Part shown: positions 1 through 40,541 of the stretch, piece by piece
How positions within the stretch are numbered: the stretch's first letter is position 1
Layout: each line of letters opens with the position of its first letter
Origin: Trichosphaerium sp. ATCC 40318
Taxonomy: Eukaryota; Protista; Tubulinea
Reading direction: 5' to 3'
NCBI GenBank assembly: GCA_038496445.1
Contig: JALMLS010000420.1
Coordinates: forward strand, 434,001 to 498,000
DNA: 64,000 bases
Notes under the pieces: generated by a model
What the model was told of the DNA's origin: nothing
Seen by the model: only the letters and a program-made list of their open reading frames with translations
Databases searched by the model: none
Translations under genes and position numbers: made by a program

Positions 1-2271
1 TTCACCTGTAGTTTGTAGGTGACACAACATCTATGAGCAAAATTAGCATGATACACATACAGTAGGTATATGTTGTTACCTGGTATATTTAAGCGTTCTC
101 TATTTTCGTTGAACCAAGCAGACATTAAGTAAGGCATTCCTGATGTAAAATTAGATGAAAAGCACGTGTTGAAAAAGAAGAAGGTAGGTGTACCTGAAGA
201 TGCACTCACACGGCAATCAGTGTTAAACACAGAGCAGTCGGTTTGAGTGTAGCAAGGGTAACATGTACATGTACCAGTATCAGGGTATACAATGCCATTA
301 ACGCAATCAACAGCAGTCAATGGTTTATAAACATCTTTCAGTGTCACAGGCAAATGAACCTTGAATGTAGTGGTTAGGTAAAGCAATGTAGCAAAGCGAT
401 TGTACTTGTTCTTTCATAGTATTGTAGTCTCCTCCGACTGCTTGTCGTAATTTTGGTGTCAAAATACTGAAGGTGTCTTCATGAAGTCCAAGATTTATTC
501 GAACATGTCCAGGTACTCCAGTCATTCCAAAATCGCTTCCACTTAAACGATTGATGAGAAAAAGTGAGACCAAGAACTCAAAGTCTTACCTTGCTACGAG
601 GATCTCGTATTTACTAAAGTGAGCGACGCAAGCCGCGCTGTCAATGAAACTACATTTGACCCACAAAAATGGAGTTCCTTCTTCACTATCAATGGTGAAC
701 TCCTTATTGTTTTCTACAAGTATTAGTAACACTAAGACAGACACTGAAATAGTAAGAGTACCAAATATTTGTTTGATAACAGACCATCTATTATTCATTT
801 CGTTGTTTATCCATGAGATATAATTATCACTGTTTTCCAGTACTTTTTCTATCATTGTAAATGTTCGGAAAACCGTATCCACACTGATATGGATAGTGTT
901 GGCATTTATGTAGCTAGATACCGCTCGCGCTACACTAGAATCTCTAAAACAAGCCCACCCGAAACTCCTAGCAAGACATGTCAACACACGGCCTCACAGT
1001 GAGGACGTACATTGAACTCTGACCAGTAATTGCTTCCATGTCAAACACGTGAATAGGAGCTTCTCTGCTAAGGTCTCCTTTTCTCCATAAAGGCCAATTT
1101 AAGGTCTAGAAACAAGGTGAGTGTACACAATAGTTGGTAAGAAACGAGAGAAGGGTGTACATTATCTTCAATCCAAAAGTTGTTACTTGTGAATTGTCTT
1201 TCGCCGTACTTGCCAGTTGTGTAACTGGGCGCCAAAACAACCTAAAAAGACAAAATGAGAAAGCTGGTACGTGTTAAGAGTGAAGATACCTCAAAAAGAT
1301 TAGATTCAGTAGGATTACTTGATGACCATTTACAACGTTTGTCAGTAAAGTCACAGAACTCTTTGTTGTGTTTTGAATACGGTGCCTCACTGTACATCTC
1401 ATTTACAATGTTTCCTAAGTGTGTCATTATCTTGCGCTAAGATAGAAAGTGCACACAATGCTGTGCGCTGAAATACCTCTATTTTGAGAGTACACGTAAT
1501 TGATCCCTGCTACAAGCATTTCCTAGGTACGTCAGGTGACTGTAGATCGCTCCTTTTATTATTTTTCGTACCTTTCCTACGCCACCTACAATATGGCACG
1601 TTTCATAAGCCTCAATGTTATTGAATTTATCATGGAGCGCAAAGAGGGCATCCTATAGGTTGGTGAGTTTTTTTTGAAAAGTAGTCATTGTTCACGTGCG
1701 CGAAAAGGGCATCGTAAGCCCGAGCAGGAGCTAGTTTTAGTGTAGACGCCTTGTAATGAATATTCGTAAGGTATACGATATGATTGAGGTTCAACAAACA
1801 TTTCTTCATTTTGGTTCCAATAAGCAGATAGAAGTGGTAACGAAGTTCCTAATTTGTAATGACCACGTGTTTTTGGGCAAAAAAATAGTTCACTTACTCG
1901 CTGTATCTATTACGCAATTTGGCGTCGTGCGCGAACAATCGGTACCCTCATGGCAAGGAAAGCATTCGCACTCGTTTGTATCTGGGAAAATATAGCCTTT
2001 ATCTAAAGGAAGCGCAAGTCAGTGTACAACCTATAGTTAATCCTAGCGTACCAGAACAAACACGTTTCAAGTTTTGGGAATGTTTGTGATCACTACCCTG
2101 GTTGGAGGAAGACAATACAACTGGTAAAACGACAACAAGAACAACTGCTACTAACAGTAGAACGCCAACGAAGACTGCTGTGTATTTGCCAATAGAAATA
2201 GGTCTATCACTGCCACCATCGCTAACTAAAAGACCTGAAGTCTCTTGGTTTTGGTTAGGAGAACCTTTCAT
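1..2271 (-). CDS. Type II membrane protein with two tandem alliinase/tryptophan aminotransferase-related (EGF-like + PLP fold) modules; runs off the window start
   Basis: ATG at 2271, then a TM helix (AVFVGVLLLVAVVLVVVLPVV) and an alliinase-type EGF-like segment (CECFPCHEGTDCS). APYS, SFGWACFRD, TPFLWVKC and GSDFG..VRINL match alliinase/TAR motifs. A second EGF-like segment CTCYPCYTQTDCS lies at about 200-330. Multi-exon. Confidence 0.8.
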
Positions 2272-12128: not shown

Positions 12129-13242
12129 ATGAGGCTAGTTGTAGTGTTATTAGCGTTGTCTTGTATCTGTGTAACGTACTCAGTCATTGTAGGCGCAATT
12201 GTAGCACCTCATGGCGCAGTGGCCTTCGATCCTGGTTATATACCATGGATAAACGCTACACATAAAGAATGGGTACGAAAACCGCCAACTGTAAAACAAT
12301 AAGTAAATTAGCGCACGAGTTACAATCTTTCTTACCAAAACGTAGGCATACGCTCTAAATAAGGCGTTACTTGACGTTGGTAAACTAACGGTATCTCTTG
12401 AACCGGATATAATATTTTTAAGCACTCCGCATGGCGTAGCGGCTTCTAAGGACTATACAATGTACAACAACAACGATGGCTACGGTAACGCGGATCAAAC
12501 GGAAGGAAAATACACGTTTAAAGGATACCCCAACATCAAACAACCTATCGACATAGAAATAACAAATAAGCTTGTAGAGTCGATGGGTTTAAAGAACTTT
12601 CCAGTTTCTGAGATAACAGCCTTCGCTGAGGGCGAGTCGATGCCTCTAAGATGGGGAGAAGTTATACCACTGTCTTTTATGAACACAAAAAAGTATAATC
12701 CGTCACTTGATCACGTGGCTAGAACGGTCATTTTCTCACAACCTAGGAGACGTATTAAATTAAATGGTTTACCCATGATTAATGAGTTATTACGTCTTGG
12801 TTCATCTCTAGCTGAAGAATTACATGCCATGAAGGAGAGAGTTGTTATATGTATCTCAGGAGACTTAGCTCATACTCATGACAAAGACGGTCCCTTCGGA
12901 TTTTCTGATGAAGCTGAGCCTTATGATGAAGCAATCATGAACTGGCTTTCGAGTTTAGATAGCCGCCATTTAATAGGGACTAACGCTGACGATAAAGAAT
13001 ATTATGATGATTTTGCTGTTGGGAGTGCTGCTAGTTATGTTGAGAAGGCTATTTCTTGTGGGTTTACAGGGTTTGTGATGCTTCAAGGTATCATAAACCA
13101 AGTTGGACGTGAGGTACTAGAAAGACTTTTTTTTTGAACAAAATTAGTTTTTTCTCATTGTAGTTGTTAGTGGACTTCTCATATTATGGCTGGTCCGTAT
13201 CACCCAACTTATTATGGTATGATTGTTGCTTCAATGTATTAA
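12129..13242 (+). CDS. LigB/Memo-like (class III extradiol dioxygenase fold) protein with signal peptide
   Basis: Motifs APHG, IIFLSTPHG, PLRWGEVIPL, VICISGDLAHTH and TYYGMIVA; hydrophobic N-terminus MRLVVVLLALSCICV. Confidence 0.75.
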
Positions 13243-29454: not shown

Positions 29455-30301
29455 ATGCAGCTCATAACAGTATTCGTTATCTGCTGTACAATAGCTTTAT
29501 CAAGCGCAGAATGGCCAACAGGCACAAAGCCAGCCTTTTGCCATGAATTAGGTTCGTTAGACGTTATAATTACTCTATTACTAACGTATGGTACTAGATT
29601 GCCCTGTGTTTAACGTACTTTAAATAAACGACGTAATATTTAACCTCCTTACCTCTTTAAAGGTCATTAAAACAACGTCAGCGTACCAAATACGCGAATA
29701 CATTAACAAAGAGTCATGGGTGGGAACAACGATTCAGAGCACAGACTTGCAAACCGCTATGATGACAGGTTTCATGAAAATATTTGGATACATCTCGGGC
29801 GCTAATAGTGGTATGCTTGAACCTCATTTTTCTGATACTCCTTATCGTTTTAACTCTTGTTATTATAATGTAATGATTGATTTCTATCTATAGATAATGT
29901 ACATATCGATATGACATCCCCTGTTAGGAACCATATCGTACCTGGAGAAGGTCCTTTTTGTAAATCTAATTTTACAATATCTTTCTTCAGCCCTTTCGCT
30001 TGGCAAGATAAAACACCTCCTACACCTAATGATGAAAGCATTACTATCATGACAGTCAAACCATCTAGATACGCTGTCGCTGAGTACGTAATACAAGCGC
30101 ATGAGTATATACTAACGGTTTGTTAAAAGATTCGGTGGATTTGCAATGGAAGCTGAGATTATCTCTGCAATAGAATCACTTAGTGATCAGTTATCCAATG
30201 ATGGTGTAGAATATGAAAGCGATTCTTACTTCTACGCTGGTTATGATGGACCGTACAGGGTTAAAGGTCGTCATAACGAAGTATGGAGGAAGCTTCTCTA
30301 A
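29455..30301 (+). CDS. Secreted SOUL/HEBP2-family heme-binding protein
   Basis: Signal peptide; FCHELDCP; YQIREY; GFMKIFGYISGAN; IDMTSPV; FTISFF; FGGF; YAGYDGP..RHNEVW. Confidence 0.93.
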
Positions 30302-30713
30302 GCACTTCACTCGTATTGTAAAATACAAACTATTATTTTGCTATCATTGTTTTTGTCAATCAAGCTGTGTAGAATGCCAGTTTTTTTTAAGTAGGTGTCT
30401 TTGTAGTACACACTCGATTTCATATACAGCCTAAGCACACCCTTCAACCCATTCGTCTATCTGTTTAAACAGTCCGACAAAATTGTACAACAAATACACT
30501 TCCGCGTATGAAATTTCTGTCCTACCTTGGCGCAGTACTACTCTAAATTGTGTGTTTGTTTGCTATCATAAAAACCCTTTTTTCGGGTATCTTATGAACA
30601 AAATCAAAAACTTGCGGCTGTGAAGTGAAAAAAACAAAAAACTGCGAAAACTACATCCAAAAAAAAGGCTAATTAAGGCGCGTCTTTTCAACAAAAAAAA
30701 GAGCACACAACAA

Positions 30714-31897
30714 ATGCAACAACAAGAAGATACAATCAGTTGCCTCGAAACAGACGTTTCTACGCGTGGAGATCAAATTGAACGTATCAGAGAGCGAATT
30801 GACTCAGTATCGCTTAAAAAAACGTTAATCGACGTTACAGATGACGGTATTCTTTATATTCTCGAATGGCTAGATCTAATAACTCTAATAACCGTTTCTT
30901 CCGTTTGCAAACACCTCTACACAATGTCTACGATCCAACAAAGCTACAATCCAATTCTACCTAAGATACATTCAGTTACAACAGAGTTCCAAAACAATAA
31001 GTACACACTCGACATTGTGATGGATAAGTTCGACCCTAAAATAAACTTAACGGTTAAGATTAAGACTTTTGCAAAGCAAGAGTACGATACAGGTATAAGT
31101 CCATTCTATAGAGATGTGGCACTTGGAACAGAACACGTGGTTACTTCTTTATCAGAAGAAGGACGTAATGATGCTACTGTAAAGTATTCAATTAATGTCC
31201 TTGCTTATCTTCAACAAGCAAGTGACAGAGATGTGTCAGTTATAATTGAGGCCAAAAAGAATGGAAAAACTTCAACTTCAAAACAGTACAATGTTGTGTT
31301 TGTTTGCTACTACATGCTCTATCCACCTTCGTGTTGTTTTGATGGACAAGCGTTGGTACTCATGAGCGACGGATCAAGAACGAGGGCCAAGGATATAGTC
31401 GTTGGAGATAGAGTAAGATCAGCGTCTGGAAGCATTCAAGTAGTGGAGCGCATTGATGCAACTCGTCAAAAAGTCAGAAAAAGGATGGTGTATCTTGGTG
31501 ATTTTTGGATAACACGTGGACATCCAGTACTAGTTGACGGCGAATGGTACATAAATAACATTCGCTTTCTTTGATTTTTGAATTTATTGCAAAAAGCCTC
31601 GCAGAGGAGAGATTATAAGATCTAACTTTTTTTTAAAGGTACAGACCAGATGAGTTGAAGAAGCCTGTTGAGAGGTTATCTGATGGCTTATACAATTTTG
31701 TTCTCGATGGAGAACATACTATATGTGTTGGTAAATCACAAGTATACAAATGTTGTACTCTTGGTAAGTACTGTGGTGTTCGTTTAGAGCGTTTATATCC
31801 TGCTCAAAATAAGAACTATGGAAGAAACTACTTGAAGAAAGTTGACAAAAAAGTCGGCACTGCGAGCAATGCTCAGTGTGCTGCAAAGTATCGCTGA
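30714..31897 (+). CDS. F-box protein fused to a C-terminal Vint-type Hint (intein-like) domain
   Basis: F-box LIDVTDDGILYILEWLDLITLITVSSVCK. Hint block A CFDGQALVLMSDGS..DIVVGDRV, block B ITRGHPV and C-terminal YNFVLDGEH..CCTLG. One GT-AG intron (31547-31638) restores GEW/YRPDEL. Confidence 0.85.
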
Positions 31898-32085
31898 TAC
31901 CACATATTCCAATATACATAAAAACACAACTCAAATTCAAAATACGTTTCTAGGTAGACCGTAAGGTTGTCACGAGTTCATGAAATGTAAAAAAACAAAT
32001 AAAGTTTTTTAGCCTGTGAAAATTGTTTATTGTACAAAGCATGTCCACTATACTGAGTGGTTGAATGCTGGCTATATAATTATAT

Positions 32086-33952
32086 CTATACTATTTGTGG
32101 AGAATCAGGTATCATCATCATTTTTCTAGAACGTGGTGGGTTGATTGTATAATTTTCTATTTTTTTGAGATCTATTTTGCAAGAATGTTCAATAAGTTGA
32201 TCAGTGTCCCATTTCTGTTCAGGTAATTTATTAACAACTATAACGACATTCGATGGTGTAGTATTAAGAAGTGTTTCTAAAGAAAAAAGTTAATAACAAA
32301 CAATACAAGAGACTGAACTCGAACGAACAAAAGATACAACATAAAAAACAAAGTTCGAAACAAATAGTCTTAACAAGTGACATTTGTGGTATAACTGCGT
32401 TGGCAACAACCCAGAAACTCTTGTAAAAATATGATAAGGGTATGGGCTCGAAATACGATGGAGAATTGTAAATTTCTGTTCGATAGAAGAGGTGAAAAAC
32501 AATGACGTTTTTCAACAAATAAACAGTTTTTTCGTGCCTTTGCTATAGAATAGCATGGATAGTGCTATCTTGATTAAGAAATCCATGCCTTCTACAAAGA
32601 ATATATCTAACAGACGAAATACAAGCTCAGTCTCAAACTGTTGAGTGAATAGAGTACGAAGCCAACCACCAACAAATATTTCAATATTGATTTCTAGCTC
32701 CTCAAGGTACGCTGAAAGTTTTGGTGCTATCTTCTGTAGACAGTATTTAAAGTTCTCTAAACAAGCTGGTGTCTCATCATGGAATATTTTGACAACATCA
32801 TAACGCTTTGTTATCTCCACAAATACCCAAAAAGCTGTCTAAAGCGAAGAAGGTTAACACTGATTTTCAAAAAAAAAATCACGTGTGAAATGAAAGGTTT
32901 GGCGTACTTCCTCGTTCAGGTGCATTAGAAGAGTTGCAATAATATATGACATGCCTTGACAGTATCCAACAGACGAATTAAAGTTAGCATAAGCACGTAA
33001 CACATTAGACAAGGCCAGACATCTAAAAAACAAGTCAACGAAACAATACGCTTTGGCAGCAACAATAAAAAGTCCTTACGCATCACTACCACGTGCGAAC
33101 ATTGGGTGAGATGGAAACGTTCGCGGGATATCACGATTAATAGCTTTATCAGCTTCAGTATTTGATTTCGAAGCGTACAACTAGTAGAAATAAGGAACAA
33201 CGAAGGTAATAAGACTTTTATAAAAAAAGGTTCAGAAAAACTTTCAGAATAGGTCTTCACTGCAACGTACGCCGTAAATACCAGGGTTATTACTAAGTGT
33301 CTCTGTTGCGCCACATAATGAAGGCCAAACGATCGAGCGTAACGAGTGTTTTATACCAACTCGCACTTTCTTTGTCAGCTGACACATGGCTTTGTAAGTA
33401 ATTGTTTCTCGTACTCGTAACGTCATAAAGACAGCTGACGTACCTTTGCGCCGTATACTTTTTTATCTCTGTCTTGAATTAATAACATCCACTCTTTAAT
33501 ACTCTTTTCATCTACCTGACCACCAATAGGACTACGTGTTGGGTCTGTTGTAGTTGTAGAAACTAATTTCCGTTTTTAATAAAAAGTTGTTTATTGTTGA
33601 AAACGTACGGGAAGTTTCACAAATGTCACAAACGCGTACTGGGTTCTATTTTAAATAAGAAGAGCGAAACCTTTACAAACTAGAATGTACCTTGTACCCA
33701 AGACGCAACAACTGTGACTTGTTTGATGTACAAGGGCCACAAAAGACGCGTCCACACGCCCGGCAATGATGCTAAACAAGAATTCGTTACATTGCTTCAA
33801 AACGATGTCAAATACCTTTCTATTAAACACATTAAAGCCTCTACCACATATTCTGCATGACGGCACTTCAGAATCTGTACTTGTTGTAAACATTTGTTAA
33901 ATAGAATCGGAAAAATACCTGGCTCCCACCGTGGTAGCGTAGGGCGCAACAT
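32086..33952 (-). CDS. FYVE-domain TBC RabGAP
   Basis: [35 protein letters not shown] (FYVE); [24 protein letters not shown] and WLRTLF (TBC). Confidence 0.92.
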
Positions 33953-34056: not shown

Positions 34057-36055
34057 ATGCTCCAATTAACTCCTTTCACAGAGGGAAGTCCCCTAGTGAG
34101 TGTTTACCTTGGTCCAAAAGGCAAATGGATGGTACTTGATCAAATAGCTAAGGTTGTGTTTAACTGGGATGTTACTGTGTTCAGACGCAAGATAATATTT
34201 AACCGTGCGTATTGTTCAGTGTAGTAAGTTAGTTTACGTTAAAAAAGAAATGACAACCGGAAACACCTATAAAATGATGAAAAACAATGACGCAAAGCTA
34301 TTACAACAACTACGCGATATTAGTATAGTGGATAAGAAAGCAAAACACGTATATCTGATATCAGTGCGTGAGGCTATCTAAAACAAAGAGTTAACAGCTT
34401 TTATTTAGGTACCGAGCCTTGGTCTGTTCATTCGAAGTTATAGCAGGCGTGCATCACTTTTTACGCGTTTATACGACACTGTGTACCAACTACAGGTAAG
34501 TACAATCAAAGTTAACCGACACAACAACATTTCCTGGTAAAAAAAAGGTCTTGCAATACTGCTCCCACTGTTACCTTTATTTTTACAGGAAAAATAAAGA
34601 GAACGCTTTTAAACAATAATTATTAAACCACTACGTCTAGTTTGGTAAAAATACTCTGGGAACGCCAAAGCGAAAAAGAACTTTGACGGCTGCTGATAAG
34701 AAAAGAGTTGCTGCCAGTCAAAGTTGGACTTGTGCACATTGTAAGCAATCTCTAAATGCTCGTTATGAAGTTGATCATATAGTACAATTTGCACATGGTG
34801 GTACAGACGATCCATCTAATTTACAGGTAACAGTTCTTTTTTTTTTTTTGGTTGAGAAATTAACTGTCTTTTTCTTTTGTTTTATGCCCACGTGGGCTTT
34901 AAGTTTTTTTTTTGTGACGTTATTTGTATTTAACGATTTTGATAAGGCGCTGTGCTCGAATTGTCACGCAGCAAAGACAGATGCAGATCTGTGTAAAGAT
35001 AGACAATCAATTCGTCAAGATGAAATGAATTTTCTAGCGCCTTTGATTTCGAGTCAAATGAACTCTCAGCGACCTTTACCTCGAAAGCCAATTATAAATT
35101 CAAGGTCATTAGATGGATTACAAGATGCTCTAGCAAGTTTTGATAATGCTGATGATGATATATCTCAAGAAAATGATGACAAATTAGGAGAAGAAATAAA
35201 AGAAAGTCAAAAAGATGAAAGCGCTGATTACGATATTTTCGATATCAACACAATGTACAAAAGTAATGATGATAGTAGTCTAAGTATAAACTTGTTTATG
35301 GATGATGACGATTTGCCAGATAAAAATAAACCAAGCGACCGTAGTGAAAAAAAGGATTCATTTAAAGACATTTCAGATAAAGACCTTGAACATCTTGAAG
35401 ACGAAGTCCAAAAAGACTTTGATGCTATTATGGGTGAATCAATTGATGAAGATGCAACACAAGTTGACCTCATCAAGCCTCAGGATGATGTATCTATGAT
35501 TGATATACCTGATGAAGACGAAGAACAAGAAGAAGAAGACGAAAACCTATTTGTTGATGAATATCAATTTAATGAAGATGACGATAAAAACGATGGTGAC
35601 TATATAGCAGACGATGATAACATTAAAAAGCCAGCATCAATACCTAAACCAAGGAAAAAACCAAAGAAGAAGACACCTAAAAAAATAGGCACGTGACCAT
35701 CTTTTTCAACCCCAAACGAAGAAAACAATAACACTATTTTAAGCATCTTAATATTATGTCATAACTGACTGTTTATTAGGTGTACAAGGCGGTAAAGTGA
35801 CAAAAAAAAAGAAAACTCCTAAAAAAAAACCTGGAACTGGATTTTCTGCAAAAGGTTTCTTTTCTCCACCTTCAAAAAACCTATCAAAGAAGAAGATAGG
35901 TAATGTAGTATTAACACCTAGAAAGTTGAGTAAATCAGAGTACGTACAAGCTTTTTAAATTTAAATAGAAAGTTCGAAAATGCTAAGTTTTCCTTAGTGA
36001 CAATAGCGATACGTCATTTGGTATGCAACTACGTAGCTCCGTAGACGCTAAATAA
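34057..36055 (+). CDS. HNH endonuclease-domain protein with N-terminal putative DNA-binding domain, acidic region and Lys-rich tail
   Basis: KKRVAASQSWTCAHCKQSLNARYEVDHIVQFAHGGTDDPSNLQ/ALCSNCHAAKT, spliced; long D/E tract; KKKTPKK repeats. Confidence 0.85.
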
Positions 36056-39470: not shown

Positions 39471-40541
39471 TTAAAACATGAACTCAAAACCTCTTAGTGA
39501 TTCAGGAATACCTTCAATTTTTCGTATACTATGAAATATTCTATGAACGCCAGAAACAGCTTTGATACCATCATCTGTTATACCTTCACAATGACAAATA
39601 TCAATAGTATGAACGCCTTTAAGAGCTTTTATCCCTTCATCTGTAATTTTGTTACTTTGAGCATAAATAGTATGCACACCAGATAGAGCTTTGATACCAT
39701 CATCTGTGATACTTTCGCAGTGACTAATATCAATTGTATGAACATGAGAAAGAGCTTTTAACCCTTTATCAGTTACTAAAGTATTTGAAAGATAAATTTC
39801 ATCAACACCAGATAGAGCTTTGATACCATCGTCTGTTATGTCTTTACAACCTCGAAGATCAATGATGTGAACACCAGAAAGAGCTTTAATCCCTTCATCT
39901 GTTACAGAAGTATAGGAAAGGTCTACATCATATGCACTTGCAAGTGATTTGATTCCTTCATCCGTAATGCCTTTACTCTGTCCAAGTTTAATGGTGTGAA
40001 CGCCTTTGAGAGCTTTGATGCCTTCATCTGTAACACCATCACAACATCCAAGATTAATGGTGTGAACGCCTTTGAGAGCTTTGATGCCTTCATCTGTAAC
40101 TGGAGTATAAAAAAGGCTTATATCATGAACACCAGATAATGCTTTGATTCCTTCATCTGTAACAGTCTTGCAACATGAAAGATTGATTGTATGAACACCA
40201 GAGAATTCTTTGATCAGGTTGTGATCAATAAAGCTGCCGAGTGTGATGTAAGTATGTCGTAGAGTGGCAGAATGTTGTAAGAATATTTTAGTTTGTTCCT
40301 GAGTAGAAATGGTAACAGCATTGTATCCAATAATATCGTGAATGATAGATGCAATGTAGTGACATGTTTGACAAGCTTTAAATCGCGAGCGGAATATGTT
40401 ACGTAAAATTTTTGCTATCATCTCGACAGGAAGGTCTAAGAGGTTCTTTTGAGTAGTACTACAGAAAAGTGGCGTTTAGAACGAGCACAAGGAATATTGT
40501 ACATACGTCTGATTCACGACTTCTATGTTGTTTTTTAACAT
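39471..40541 (-). CDS. F-box/LRR protein (TDEGIKALSGVHTI-type repeats)
   Basis: LLDLPVEMIAKILRNIF F-box-like start after a short first exon, then about 10 repeats of roughly 21-22 aa. Confidence 0.85.

What the first reader, a model, noticed from the sequence alone, without database searches (positions are those of the whole stretch)
30714..31897. F-box protein fused to an apparently catalytically intact Vint-type Hint domain: a possible self-cleaving SCF adaptor
Seen: an N-terminal F-box-like motif, about 120 aa of beta-rich middle region, then YPPSC|CFDGQALVLMSDGS. This gives a Cys nucleophile in block A, TxxH (TRGH) in block B, and the Vint-style end YNFVLDGEH..V..CCTLG..NYG. Established: Vint Hint domains are normally described behind a VWA domain, and Hint domains perform an N-S acyl shift that cleaves the chain or attaches a nucleophile, as Hedgehog does with cholesterol. 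Inference: the F-box half could be released as a C-terminal thioester and ligated to a lipid, small molecule or substrate, coupling SCF ubiquitination to autoprocessing. I know of no described F-box-Vint architecture.
Basis: partly seen in the sequence, partly recalled or inferred. Interest (0 to 1): 0.9.

Follow-up and report, generated by a model that had tools for sequence, protein, structure and literature searches.

The report
F-box protein ending in self-cleaving Vint domain
This is an intact two-exon gene of an amoeba-like protist whose protein joins a probable ubiquitin-ligase docking motif (F-box) and a small beta-sandwich to a hedgehog/intein-type self-cutting domain, a combination that recurs in a few unnamed protist sequences but that I found in no paper and that nobody has tested.

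Summary
Window 30714-31546 plus 31639-31897 (+) encodes a 363-aa protein. It has a probable F-box (residues 41-75; Pfam PF00646, just above its cut-off), a predicted Ig/FN3-like beta-sandwich (about 79-203), and a complete Vint-type Hint domain (204-346). The Vint domain carries Cys208 as first residue, T267-R-G-H270, and a family-invariant Cys316.

The F-box and Vint blocks A and B lie in one uninterrupted ORF, so the fusion does not depend on the intron. The intron (31547-31638, GT..AG) is supported by homology only. Four spliced, transcriptome-like public assemblies cover both neighbouring genes but not this one.

At least six other public proteins, one from Arcella intermedia and the rest unnamed, pair an above-threshold F-box with a C-terminal Vint. 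Vint also follows VWA, WWE, methyltransferase, TSP1 and LIM modules. I found no paper on F-box-Vint.

This scan had already noted about seven such genes elsewhere in the same genome; two were followed up.

Best reading: intracellular autoproteolysis at Cys207|Cys208 through a thioester, releasing an F-box plus sandwich fragment. Cleavage, Skp1 binding and any ligation of the fragment are untested. Class: new variant of a known kind.

The parts
30714..31546 (+). Exon 1 (codons 1-277 plus two bases of Trp278). It holds the start ATG, the F-box, the beta-sandwich and Vint blocks A and B.
   Evidence: ORF list and sequence. An in-frame stop lies 31 codons upstream of the ATG.
30834..30938 (+). Probable F-box, residues 41-75 (VTDDGILYILEWLDLITLITVSSVCKHLYTM...). 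V41-T42 stand where L-P usually is.
   Evidence: PF00646 21.7 bits against a cut-off of 20.5, E 1.8e-4; PF12937 E 4.4e-3. hhalign against the relatives' F-boxes gives the expected register, E 0.025. The family N-terminal profile hits almost only F-box proteins in the PDB.
30948..31322 (+). Middle domain, residues about 79-203: a predicted 7-8-stranded Ig/FN3-like beta-sandwich with no sequence relatives. It is the presumed substrate- or partner-binding part.
   Evidence: AF2 on this domain alone: pLDDT 70, pTM 0.63. VIA-align best matches are FN3-type receptor domains, Z 6.4-7.8. No Pfam hit and no sequence relative among the fetched proteins.
31332..31337 (+). Predicted scissile site Cys207|Cys208. 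Cys208 is the Hint block A nucleophile.
   Evidence: Cys208 is invariant in alignments A2 and A3 and is position 1-2 of the Vint, Hint and Hom_end_hint profiles.
31512..31523 (+). Hint block B: T267-R-G-H270.
   Evidence: I-T-x-G-H-P is invariant in 13 of 13 family sequences. It aligns to ITPKHP of the solved Vint domain 8r2c.
31547..31638 (+). Intron: 92 nt, GTACAT...AAAG, phase 2. If retained, a stop follows at 31572-31574 and the Vint domain is truncated.
   Evidence: The frame is restored and gap-free alignments run across the junction. GC is 0.28 against 0.39 in the exons, and an RNA-supported neighbouring intron starts GTACGT. No RNA contig covers this gene.
31639..31897 (+). Exon 2 (last base of Trp278, codons 279-363, and the stop TGA). 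It holds the C-terminal half of Vint (to residue 346, nt 31843) and a 17-residue hydrophilic tail.
31751..31753 (+). Cys316, in the motif C-C-T-L-G. It is invariant in the family and is a candidate second catalytic Cys.
   Evidence: Invariant column C115 of A3. The motif aligns to C..LG of 8r2c. The analogy to Hedgehog C143 (PMC12054796) is inference only.

Best explanation
This is a real, intact nuclear gene for a cytosolic 41-kDa protein built of a short N-terminal helix, an F-box, an Ig/FN3-like beta-sandwich and a C-terminal Vint-type Hint domain. The most likely mechanism has four steps. (1) After folding, the Vint domain performs an intramolecular N-to-S acyl shift in which Cys208 attacks the carbonyl of Cys207, assisted by Thr267 and His270 and possibly relayed to Cys316. 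(2) The resulting thioester is resolved, by default by water or a small thiol. (3) This frees a 23.6-kDa F-box plus sandwich fragment (pI 5.3) from the 17.7-kDa basic Vint fragment (pI 9.6). (4) The freed fragment acts as, or is regulated as, a substrate receptor of an SCF ubiquitin ligase. Shown here: the gene structure, the domain identities and the conservation of the catalytic residues. Inferred: cleavage, Skp1 binding, and what cleavage is for (maturation or unmasking of the receptor).
For: One ORF carries both the F-box and Vint blocks A and B. The full Vint matches end to end: 178.9 bits against an HMM built without the window sequence. The relatives' Vint profile (A3) hits the solved Vint domain 8r2c at 1.3e-15, then the PI-SceI/VMA and Prp8 inteins and Hedgehog. 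Cys-1, G-D and I-T-x-G-H-P are invariant in 13 of 13 relatives at only 19-28% overall identity. A further Cys is invariant in the 11 full-length relatives and present in the window protein as Cys316. F-box scores above the Pfam cut-off in the window protein and in P0003, P0011, P0018, P0027, P0064 and P0029, all of which carry a C-terminal Vint. There is no signal peptide: the first 30 residues have mean hydropathy -1.1. Buerglin 2008 (PMC2362128) already argued that Vint proteins are processed inside the cell and noted U-box-VWA-Vint proteins, so pairing an E3 module with Vint has a precedent.
Against: There are no biochemical data for any Vint domain in the searchable literature. There is no expression evidence for this gene. 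The F-box is marginal: 21.7 against 20.5 bits, it lacks L-P, a small HMM of the relatives' F-boxes did not find it, and AF2 draws one long low-confidence helix. The residue before the nucleophile is Cys or another bulky residue in the family, not Gly as in Hedgehog. One relative (L002) has Tyr in place of Cys-1, which hints that a non-catalytic role may suffice. I could not model the whole Vint domain of this protein.
Confidence: 0.6

Rival explanations
1. The Vint domain does not cleave. It acts as the C-terminal partner- or substrate-binding module of an ordinary F-box receptor, as the non-catalytic Hint-like AXH module binds partners, and the protein works full length.
For: In canonical F-box proteins the part C-terminal to the F-box binds substrates. 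Pfam AXH profiles cross-hit many of these Hint domains. L002 carries Tyr instead of Cys-1 and was still recovered from a short, intron-less contig.
Against: Cys-1 and T-x-x-H are invariant across 13 relatives that are otherwise only 19-28% identical. That pattern is what selection on catalysis would give. The Tyr in L002 may be a sequencing error.
Confidence: 0.17
2. The thioester at the end of the F-box fragment is resolved by a specific nucleophile (a lipid, a small molecule or a lysine of a target protein), so the SCF adaptor becomes covalently anchored or covalently tags its substrate.
For: The chemistry is that of Hedgehog cholesterolysis and intein-derived thioesters (established knowledge; PMC12054796). 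Vint recurs with ubiquitin-system modules: U-box, WWE (P0032) and F-box.
Against: No adduct-recruiting region is visible. After the Hint core only 17 hydrophilic residues remain, and nothing resembles a sterol-recognition region. There are no data at all on Vint products.
Confidence: 0.13
3. This copy is a silent or decaying paralogue of a multi-copy family and has no function of its own.
For: No contig of four spliced, transcriptome-like runs covers 30305-32021, although both neighbouring genes are covered. No RNA run was listed. The N-terminal 207 residues have no relatives in public data. The F-box is degenerate.
Against: Both exons are open over 363 codons. The splice sites are canonical. 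Every family-invariant residue is kept, and the copy scores 178.9 bits against the family HMM. The runs are small assemblies that hold only abundant transcripts.
Confidence: 0.07
4. The hydrophobic stretch 46-64 is a membrane anchor rather than an F-box. That would place the sandwich and Vint in a lumen or outside the cell, as in secreted Hog proteins.
For: The 19-residue Kyte-Doolittle maximum is 1.75 at residues 46-64. AF2 draws a single long helix over 43-74. The Pfam F-box score is only just above the cut-off.
Against: Asp and Glu lie inside the stretch (E51, D54). The register fits the F-box consensus exactly, from I-L-x-x-I-L-x-x-L-D to V-C-K-x-L. Three F-box profiles are the only N-terminal Pfam hits. 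Relatives with the same layout have clear, non-hydrophobic F-boxes.
Confidence: 0.03

Closest known systems
VWA-Vwaint-Vint proteins (Buerglin 2008, PMC2362128; Pfam PF14623; solved Vint domain PDB 8r2c)
   Same: It has the same Hint subtype: a C-terminal Vint with block A Cys and block B T-x-x-H, and a C..LG motif near the end. It has no signal peptide, so processing would be intracellular. Some founding members also carry an E3 module (U-box).
   Different: It has no VWA or Vwaint domain. An F-box and a small beta-sandwich precede the Vint. The Vint is shorter than the Pfam model: in the relative P0001 only profile positions 2-114 of 166 are matched, whereas classical VWA-Vint hits P0058 and P0038 match 1-166.
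Unnamed F-box-X-Vint proteins in public data (P0001 Arcella intermedia EP01124; P0003, P0011, P0018, P0027, P0064, P0029, L001)
   Same: The order of modules is the same, and so are the invariant residues: C, GD, ITRGHP, W-RPDE, YN, C..LG.YC..R...P. Vint identity is 40-55%. The window protein groups with P0003, P0030, P0054, P0013 and P0027 in the Vint tree.
   Different: The N-terminal 207 residues of the window protein share no detectable sequence similarity with any of them. Their middle parts differ: an FN3-like 'F-x-V-x-A-x-N-x-x-G' signature, a GRDP-like region, or an added LIM domain.
Hedgehog/Hog proteins
   Same: Both have a cargo domain followed by a Hint module that starts with Cys, and the predicted chemistry is the same (N-S acyl shift, thioester, release of the N-terminal fragment). 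A conserved late Cys may parallel Hedgehog C143.
   Different: There is no signal peptide and no sterol-recognition region. Pfam Hint PF01079 scores below its cut-off (22.9 against 29.7). The residue at -1 is Cys, not Gly. The protein is cytosolic rather than secreted.
Canonical F-box substrate receptors (Skp2, Cdc4/Fbw7, TIR1, FBXO2 and others)
   Same: It has an N-terminal F-box of about 40 residues followed by a separate fold that could bind a substrate. FBXO2-type receptors also use a beta-sandwich.
   Different: I know of no characterised F-box protein that ends in an autoprocessing domain. The L-P dipeptide that usually opens the F-box is missing.
Inteins
   Same: They share the Hint fold and blocks A and B. 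The PI-SceI/VMA and Prp8 inteins are the next-best PDB sequence matches.
   Different: There is no C-extein, because the domain ends the protein. There is no terminal His-Asn plus nucleophile, so protein splicing is impossible and only N-terminal cleavage can occur.

Membership tests
Vint-type Hint domain (Pfam PF14623) | Profile match above Pfam's gathering score | tested here: met
   29.8 bits against 27 on exon 1 alone, which holds only half of the domain. The relatives' HMM gives 178.9 bits over both exons.
Vint-type Hint domain (Pfam PF14623) | Block A nucleophile (Cys) as first residue and block B T-x-x-H | tested here: met
   Cys208 and T267-R-G-H270 are invariant in family alignments A2 and A3. 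They align to 8r2c.
Vint-type Hint domain (Pfam PF14623) | Founding architecture VWA-Vwaint-Vint (Buerglin 2008) | tested here: not met
   No VWA or Vwaint hit at E up to 10. Classical members P0026 and P0058 show both.
Vint-type Hint domain (Pfam PF14623) | Autoproteolytic cleavage at the residue before Cys-1 | not testable with these tools
   This needs expression of wild type and C208A/H270A mutants. No published Vint biochemistry was found.
F-box protein / SCF substrate receptor | F-box profile match above the gathering score | tested here: met
   PF00646 scores 21.7 bits against 20.5, E 1.8e-4, residues 43-75. PF12937 and PF18511 are below threshold. The match is marginal.
F-box protein / SCF substrate receptor | Conserved L-P dipeptide opening helix 1 | tested here: not met
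   V41-T42 stand in that register. Relatives P0001, P0003 and L001 have L-P.
F-box protein / SCF substrate receptor | Three-helix F-box fold | tested here: inconclusive
   AF2 gives one helix over 43-74 at pLDDT 46-54. The confidence is too low to judge.
F-box protein / SCF substrate receptor | Binding to Skp1 | not testable with these tools
   This needs a pull-down or a complex prediction with the organism's Skp1. Earlier notes mention Skp1 genes in this genome, which I did not check.
Hedgehog/Hog proteins | Secreted N-terminal cargo (signal peptide) and a sterol-recognition region after the Hint module | tested here: not met
   The N-terminus is hydrophilic (mean KD -1.1) and only a 17-residue polar tail follows the Hint core. 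PF01079 scores 22.9, below 29.7.
Inteins | C-extein and a C-terminal His-Asn plus nucleophile for splicing | tested here: not met
   The protein ends 17 residues after the Hint core, and no Intein_splicing hit was found.
FN3 / Ig-like beta-sandwich (middle domain) | Fold match to solved FN3 or Ig domains, or a profile match | tested here: inconclusive
   There is no Pfam hit. The domain-only AF2 model (pLDDT 70) matches FN3-type receptor domains at Z 6.4-7.8, below the level the tool calls specific. Foldseek TM is at most 0.42 among the hits with E of 1e-3 or better.

The most novel reading that the evidence does not exclude
The Vint domain turns the F-box plus sandwich fragment into a C-terminal thioester, which is passed to a defined nucleophile: a lysine of a bound target, a lipid or a metabolite. 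An SCF adaptor would then become covalently attached to its substrate or to a membrane. That would be a self-activating 'covalent degron' system, found in an expanded gene family of amoeboid protists and parallel to U-box-VWA-Vint and WWE-Vint proteins.
Probability: 0.13. Interest if true: 0.9.

Novelty: new variant of a known kind. Interest (0 to 1): 0.55.

Why it matters
Hint domains are known for two biological uses: protein splicing and cholesterol-tagging of Hedgehog. The third eukaryotic branch, Vint, has a solved structure, but I found no published function for it. A family in which Vint sits behind an F-box, and elsewhere behind U-box and WWE modules, points to a link between thioester-forming autoprocessing and ubiquitin ligases inside the cell.

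If cleavage occurs, these would be, to my knowledge, the first SCF receptors matured or armed by their own Hint domain. If the thioester is transferred, it would be a new way of marking proteins. The genes are small (363 codons), so the idea is cheap to test in vitro. If nothing cleaves, the finding reduces to one more shuffled domain combination in a protist with a large F-box repertoire.

Tried and rejected
- **Word-indexed protein searches:** the search with exon 1 and the search with the family profile returned only one and two proteins, so that database hardly holds this family.
- **ESM Atlas:** the feature search on residues 1-206 gave no usable hit.
- **Pfam on the middle regions** of the window protein and nine relatives gave nothing relevant.
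- **phmmer and blastp** of residues 1-207 against all fetched proteins gave nothing.
- **A five-sequence HMM of the relatives' F-boxes** did not detect the window's F-box. hhalign found it only weakly.
- **AF2 of exon 1 with a 13-row alignment** was poor (pLDDT 56). Foldseek on that model gave only TM 0.2-0.3 hits.
- **Metagenome scan** found just two loci.
- **RNA evidence:** no RNA run was listed, and the laid contigs miss the gene.
- **Literature searches** for Vint biochemistry, the 8r2c paper, or F-box plus Hint found nothing relevant.
- **Gene-model artefact, rejected:** the idea that two genes were joined by a wrong model fails, because the F-box and Vint blocks A and B share one ORF.
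- **Intein, rejected:** there is no C-extein.
- **Hedgehog-like secreted protein, rejected:** there is no signal peptide and no sterol-recognition region.
- **Not done:** I did not predict the structure of the whole spliced protein or of its complete Vint domain.
- **Not done:** I did not establish the organism's identity. Earlier notes call it amoeba-like.

Full report
**Gene model**

The + strand carries an ORF from the ATG at 30714 to a stop at 31574 (286 codons). An in-frame stop lies 31 codons upstream of the ATG. A 92-nt GT..AG intron (31547-31638, GTACAT...AAAG) joins it in frame to 31639-31897. The product is a 363-aa, 41.3-kDa protein.

The intron has 28% GC against 39% in both exons. 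Its 5' end resembles the RNA-supported neighbouring intron at 30084-30129, which starts GTACGT. If the intron were retained, a stop would follow nine codons later and the Hint domain would be cut in half.

Direct RNA support is missing. No RNA run was listed for the gene. I laid the contigs of four public runs on 29800-32800. They skip introns in the upstream gene (SOUL-like) and in the downstream RabGAP-TBC gene, so they are transcript assemblies. None covers 30305-32021.

The junction is nevertheless well supported by homology. A transcriptome-derived protein of Arcella intermedia (P0001, EukProt EP01124) aligns without a gap from residue 208 to 345, straight across GEW|YRPDE (47% identity, E 2e-35). 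An HMM built only from relatives matches residues 204-346 end to end (178.9 bits, HMM positions 4-142).

The fusion of interest does not depend on the intron. The F-box, the middle domain and Hint blocks A and B all lie in exon 1.

**Domains**

Pfam on exon 1 gives:
- Vint PF14623: 29.8 bits (cut-off 27), residues 208-276.
- Weaker hits of the same clan: Hint and Hom_end_hint.
- F-box PF00646: 21.7 bits (cut-off 20.5, E 1.8e-4), residues 43-75.
- Sub-threshold hits: F-box-like and F-box_5.
- No VWA and no Vwaint.

*Vint.* Exon 1 alone weakly hits the solved Vint domain 8r2c (E 0.016). The profile of the relatives' Vint domains hits 8r2c at 1.3e-15, followed by the PI-SceI/VMA intein, the Prp8 intein and Hedgehog.

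Cys208 (first residue of the domain), G231-D232 and I266-T-R-G-H-P271 are invariant in 13 family sequences that are otherwise 19-28% identical to the window protein. In the second half of the domain, W-x-R-P-D-E, Y-N, C..L-G..C..R and P are invariant or nearly so. The window protein has all of them.

Cys316 (nt 31751-31753) sits in the invariant Cys column. By analogy it could play the part of Hedgehog C143, which was recently shown to carry a branched thioester (PMC12054796). I could not test that equivalence.

The domain ends the protein apart from a 17-residue polar tail. Splicing is therefore impossible, and nothing resembles a sterol-recognition region.

*F-box.* The stretch V41-T-D-D-G-I-L-Y-I-L-E-W-L-D-L-I-T-L-I-T-V-S-S-V-C-K-H-L-Y69 fits the F-box consensus in exact register. 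It lacks the opening L-P and is unusually hydrophobic: the 19-residue Kyte-Doolittle maximum is 1.75.

A profile of the family's N-termini, window included, finds almost only F-box proteins in the PDB. These include Cdc4 (1.2e-4), KDM2A/B, TIR1, FBXO3, FBXL3, Skp2 and cyclin F. A profile of the relatives alone aligns to the window stretch in the right register, but weakly (E 0.025). A smaller HMM missed it.

I rate the F-box as probable, about 0.8. A membrane-anchor reading is a low-probability rival.

*Middle domain.* Residues about 79-203 have no Pfam hit, no relative among the 70 fetched proteins and no ESM Atlas look-alike.

AF2 on exon 1 with a shallow alignment was poor (pLDDT 56). The domain modelled alone gave pLDDT 70 and pTM 0.63, with eight strands.

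VIA-align against 48,161 chains puts FN3-type cytokine-receptor and fibronectin domains on top. The best is 1jrh_I at Z 7.8, rmsd 2.7 Å over 94 residues; gp130, LAR, IL-4R and MPL score Z 6.5-7.5. The whole-exon model gave the same class of matches.

All Z values are below 8, which the tool's own notes call possibly just a common arrangement. Foldseek matches are weak: TM is at most 0.42 among the twelve hits with E of 1e-3 or better. I therefore call the domain an Ig/FN3-like sandwich at moderate confidence and nothing more specific.

Several relatives show the FN3-like signature F-x-V-x-A-x-N-x-x-G before their Vint domain.

**How common is the architecture?**

An exhaustive phmmer search of 1.84 billion cluster representatives with exon 1 gave 62 hits at E up to 1e-3. 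All of them match through residues about 200-277 only. About twenty of the hits are 290-420 aa long with the Vint domain at the C-terminus.

The F-box passes Pfam's cut-off in:
- P0003 (26.2 bits)
- P0011 (22.6 bits)
- P0018 (22.4 bits)
- P0027 (25.4 bits)
- P0064 (24.5 bits, preceded by a LIM domain)
- P0029, a 1227-aa protein (25.1 bits)

It is just below the cut-off in L001 (19.6 bits) and P0001 (13.9 bits). Apart from Arcella, the sources are unnamed JGI contigs of 1-1.4 kb and Logan assemblies.

The nearest Vint domains also follow other modules. These are VWA-Vwaint (P0026, P0058), WWE (P0032), a methyltransferase (P0054), five TSP1 repeats (P0038) and tandem Hint modules.

A maximum-likelihood tree of 39 Vint domains places the window protein with P0003, P0054, P0030/P0070, P0013 and P0027 (support 91/72). 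It shows F-box carriers in at least two clades. Resolution is weak and several branches are long. I conclude only that Vint is a promiscuous C-terminal module and that F-box is one recurrent partner.

**Literature and earlier notes of this scan**

In the searchable library only Buerglin 2008 (PMC2362128) treats Vint. It describes VWA-Vwaint-Vint, argues for intracellular processing, and notes four members with an upstream U-box. No paper combines F-box with Vint or Hint in one protein. I found no paper for 8r2c.

Earlier notes of this scan list about seven other F-box-Vint genes on other pieces of this genome. Two were followed up with the same conclusion, and one is a LIM-F-box-FN3-Vint gene. 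First-reader notes also mention a large modular F-box repertoire and Skp1 genes. I did not see those sequences. My conclusions rest on the calls cited here.

**Mechanism**

*Shown:* the gene structure, the order of domains and the conservation of the catalytic residues.

*Inferred from the established chemistry of Hint domains:* Cys208 attacks the Cys207 carbonyl (N-S acyl shift), helped by Thr267 and His270. The thioester is resolved, and a 23.6-kDa acidic F-box plus sandwich fragment separates from a 17.7-kDa basic Vint fragment.

Because no nucleophile-recruiting region is visible, hydrolysis or thiolysis is the default outcome. Transfer to a lysine, lipid or metabolite is the exciting minority case; I put it at about 0.13.

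Against catalysis, one metatranscriptome relative (L002) has Tyr in place of Cys-1. This could be a sequencing error or a non-catalytic member.

**Verdict**

The finding is a new variant of a known kind: a Vint/Hint autoprocessing domain with an F-box partner. It recurs in this genome and in a few other protist sequences, is undescribed in the literature I could search, and is entirely untested at the bench.

Noticed in passing
L002:130-1164 (+): A metatranscriptome relative of P0013 has Tyr where every other family member has the Cys-1 nucleophile (..TFKGYFDGRSMIKMADL..). This is either a sequencing error or a naturally non-catalytic Vint.
   Followed up: no
L001:15-347 and 76-1041 (+): A clear F-box (LPYEIFPYILKYLDLEDIIRL) and the FN3-like plus Vint part lie in two different frames of one 1073-nt contig. 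This is a frameshift error or a short unspliced intron.
   Followed up: no
P0064, P0054, P0032, P0038 (public proteins): Close Vint domains sit behind LIM+F-box, a class I methyltransferase, a WWE domain and five TSP1 repeats. In L003 a methyltransferase gene lies just upstream of the Vint gene P0070, so the two may really be one gene.
   Followed up: partly
window 34683-35696 (+): This 337-aa ORF has an HNH endonuclease motif (PF01844, 27 bits) near its N-terminus, which is unusual in a eukaryotic nuclear window.
   Followed up: no
window 32277-32537 (- strand gene, RabGAP-TBC): The intron skipped by contigs of all four runs reads GC..AG on the coding strand (aag|GCACGA...TTTAG|aa). It is an apparently non-canonical GC-AG intron.
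   Followed up: partly
window 29893-30301 (+): The upstream neighbour ends in a SOUL haem-binding domain (PF04832). It has a 46-nt GT..AG intron (30084-30129) supported by one contig of run X2.
   Followed up: partly
window 39471-40421 (-): This 316-aa ORF is full of RNI-type leucine-rich repeats (LRR_6, 105 bits). It may belong to the F-box-LRR repertoire that earlier notes mention. No F-box was seen in this ORF itself.
   Followed up: no
window 12460-13137 (+): An ORF with a LigB-type extradiol ring-cleavage dioxygenase domain (PF02900, 39.8 bits).
   Followed up: no
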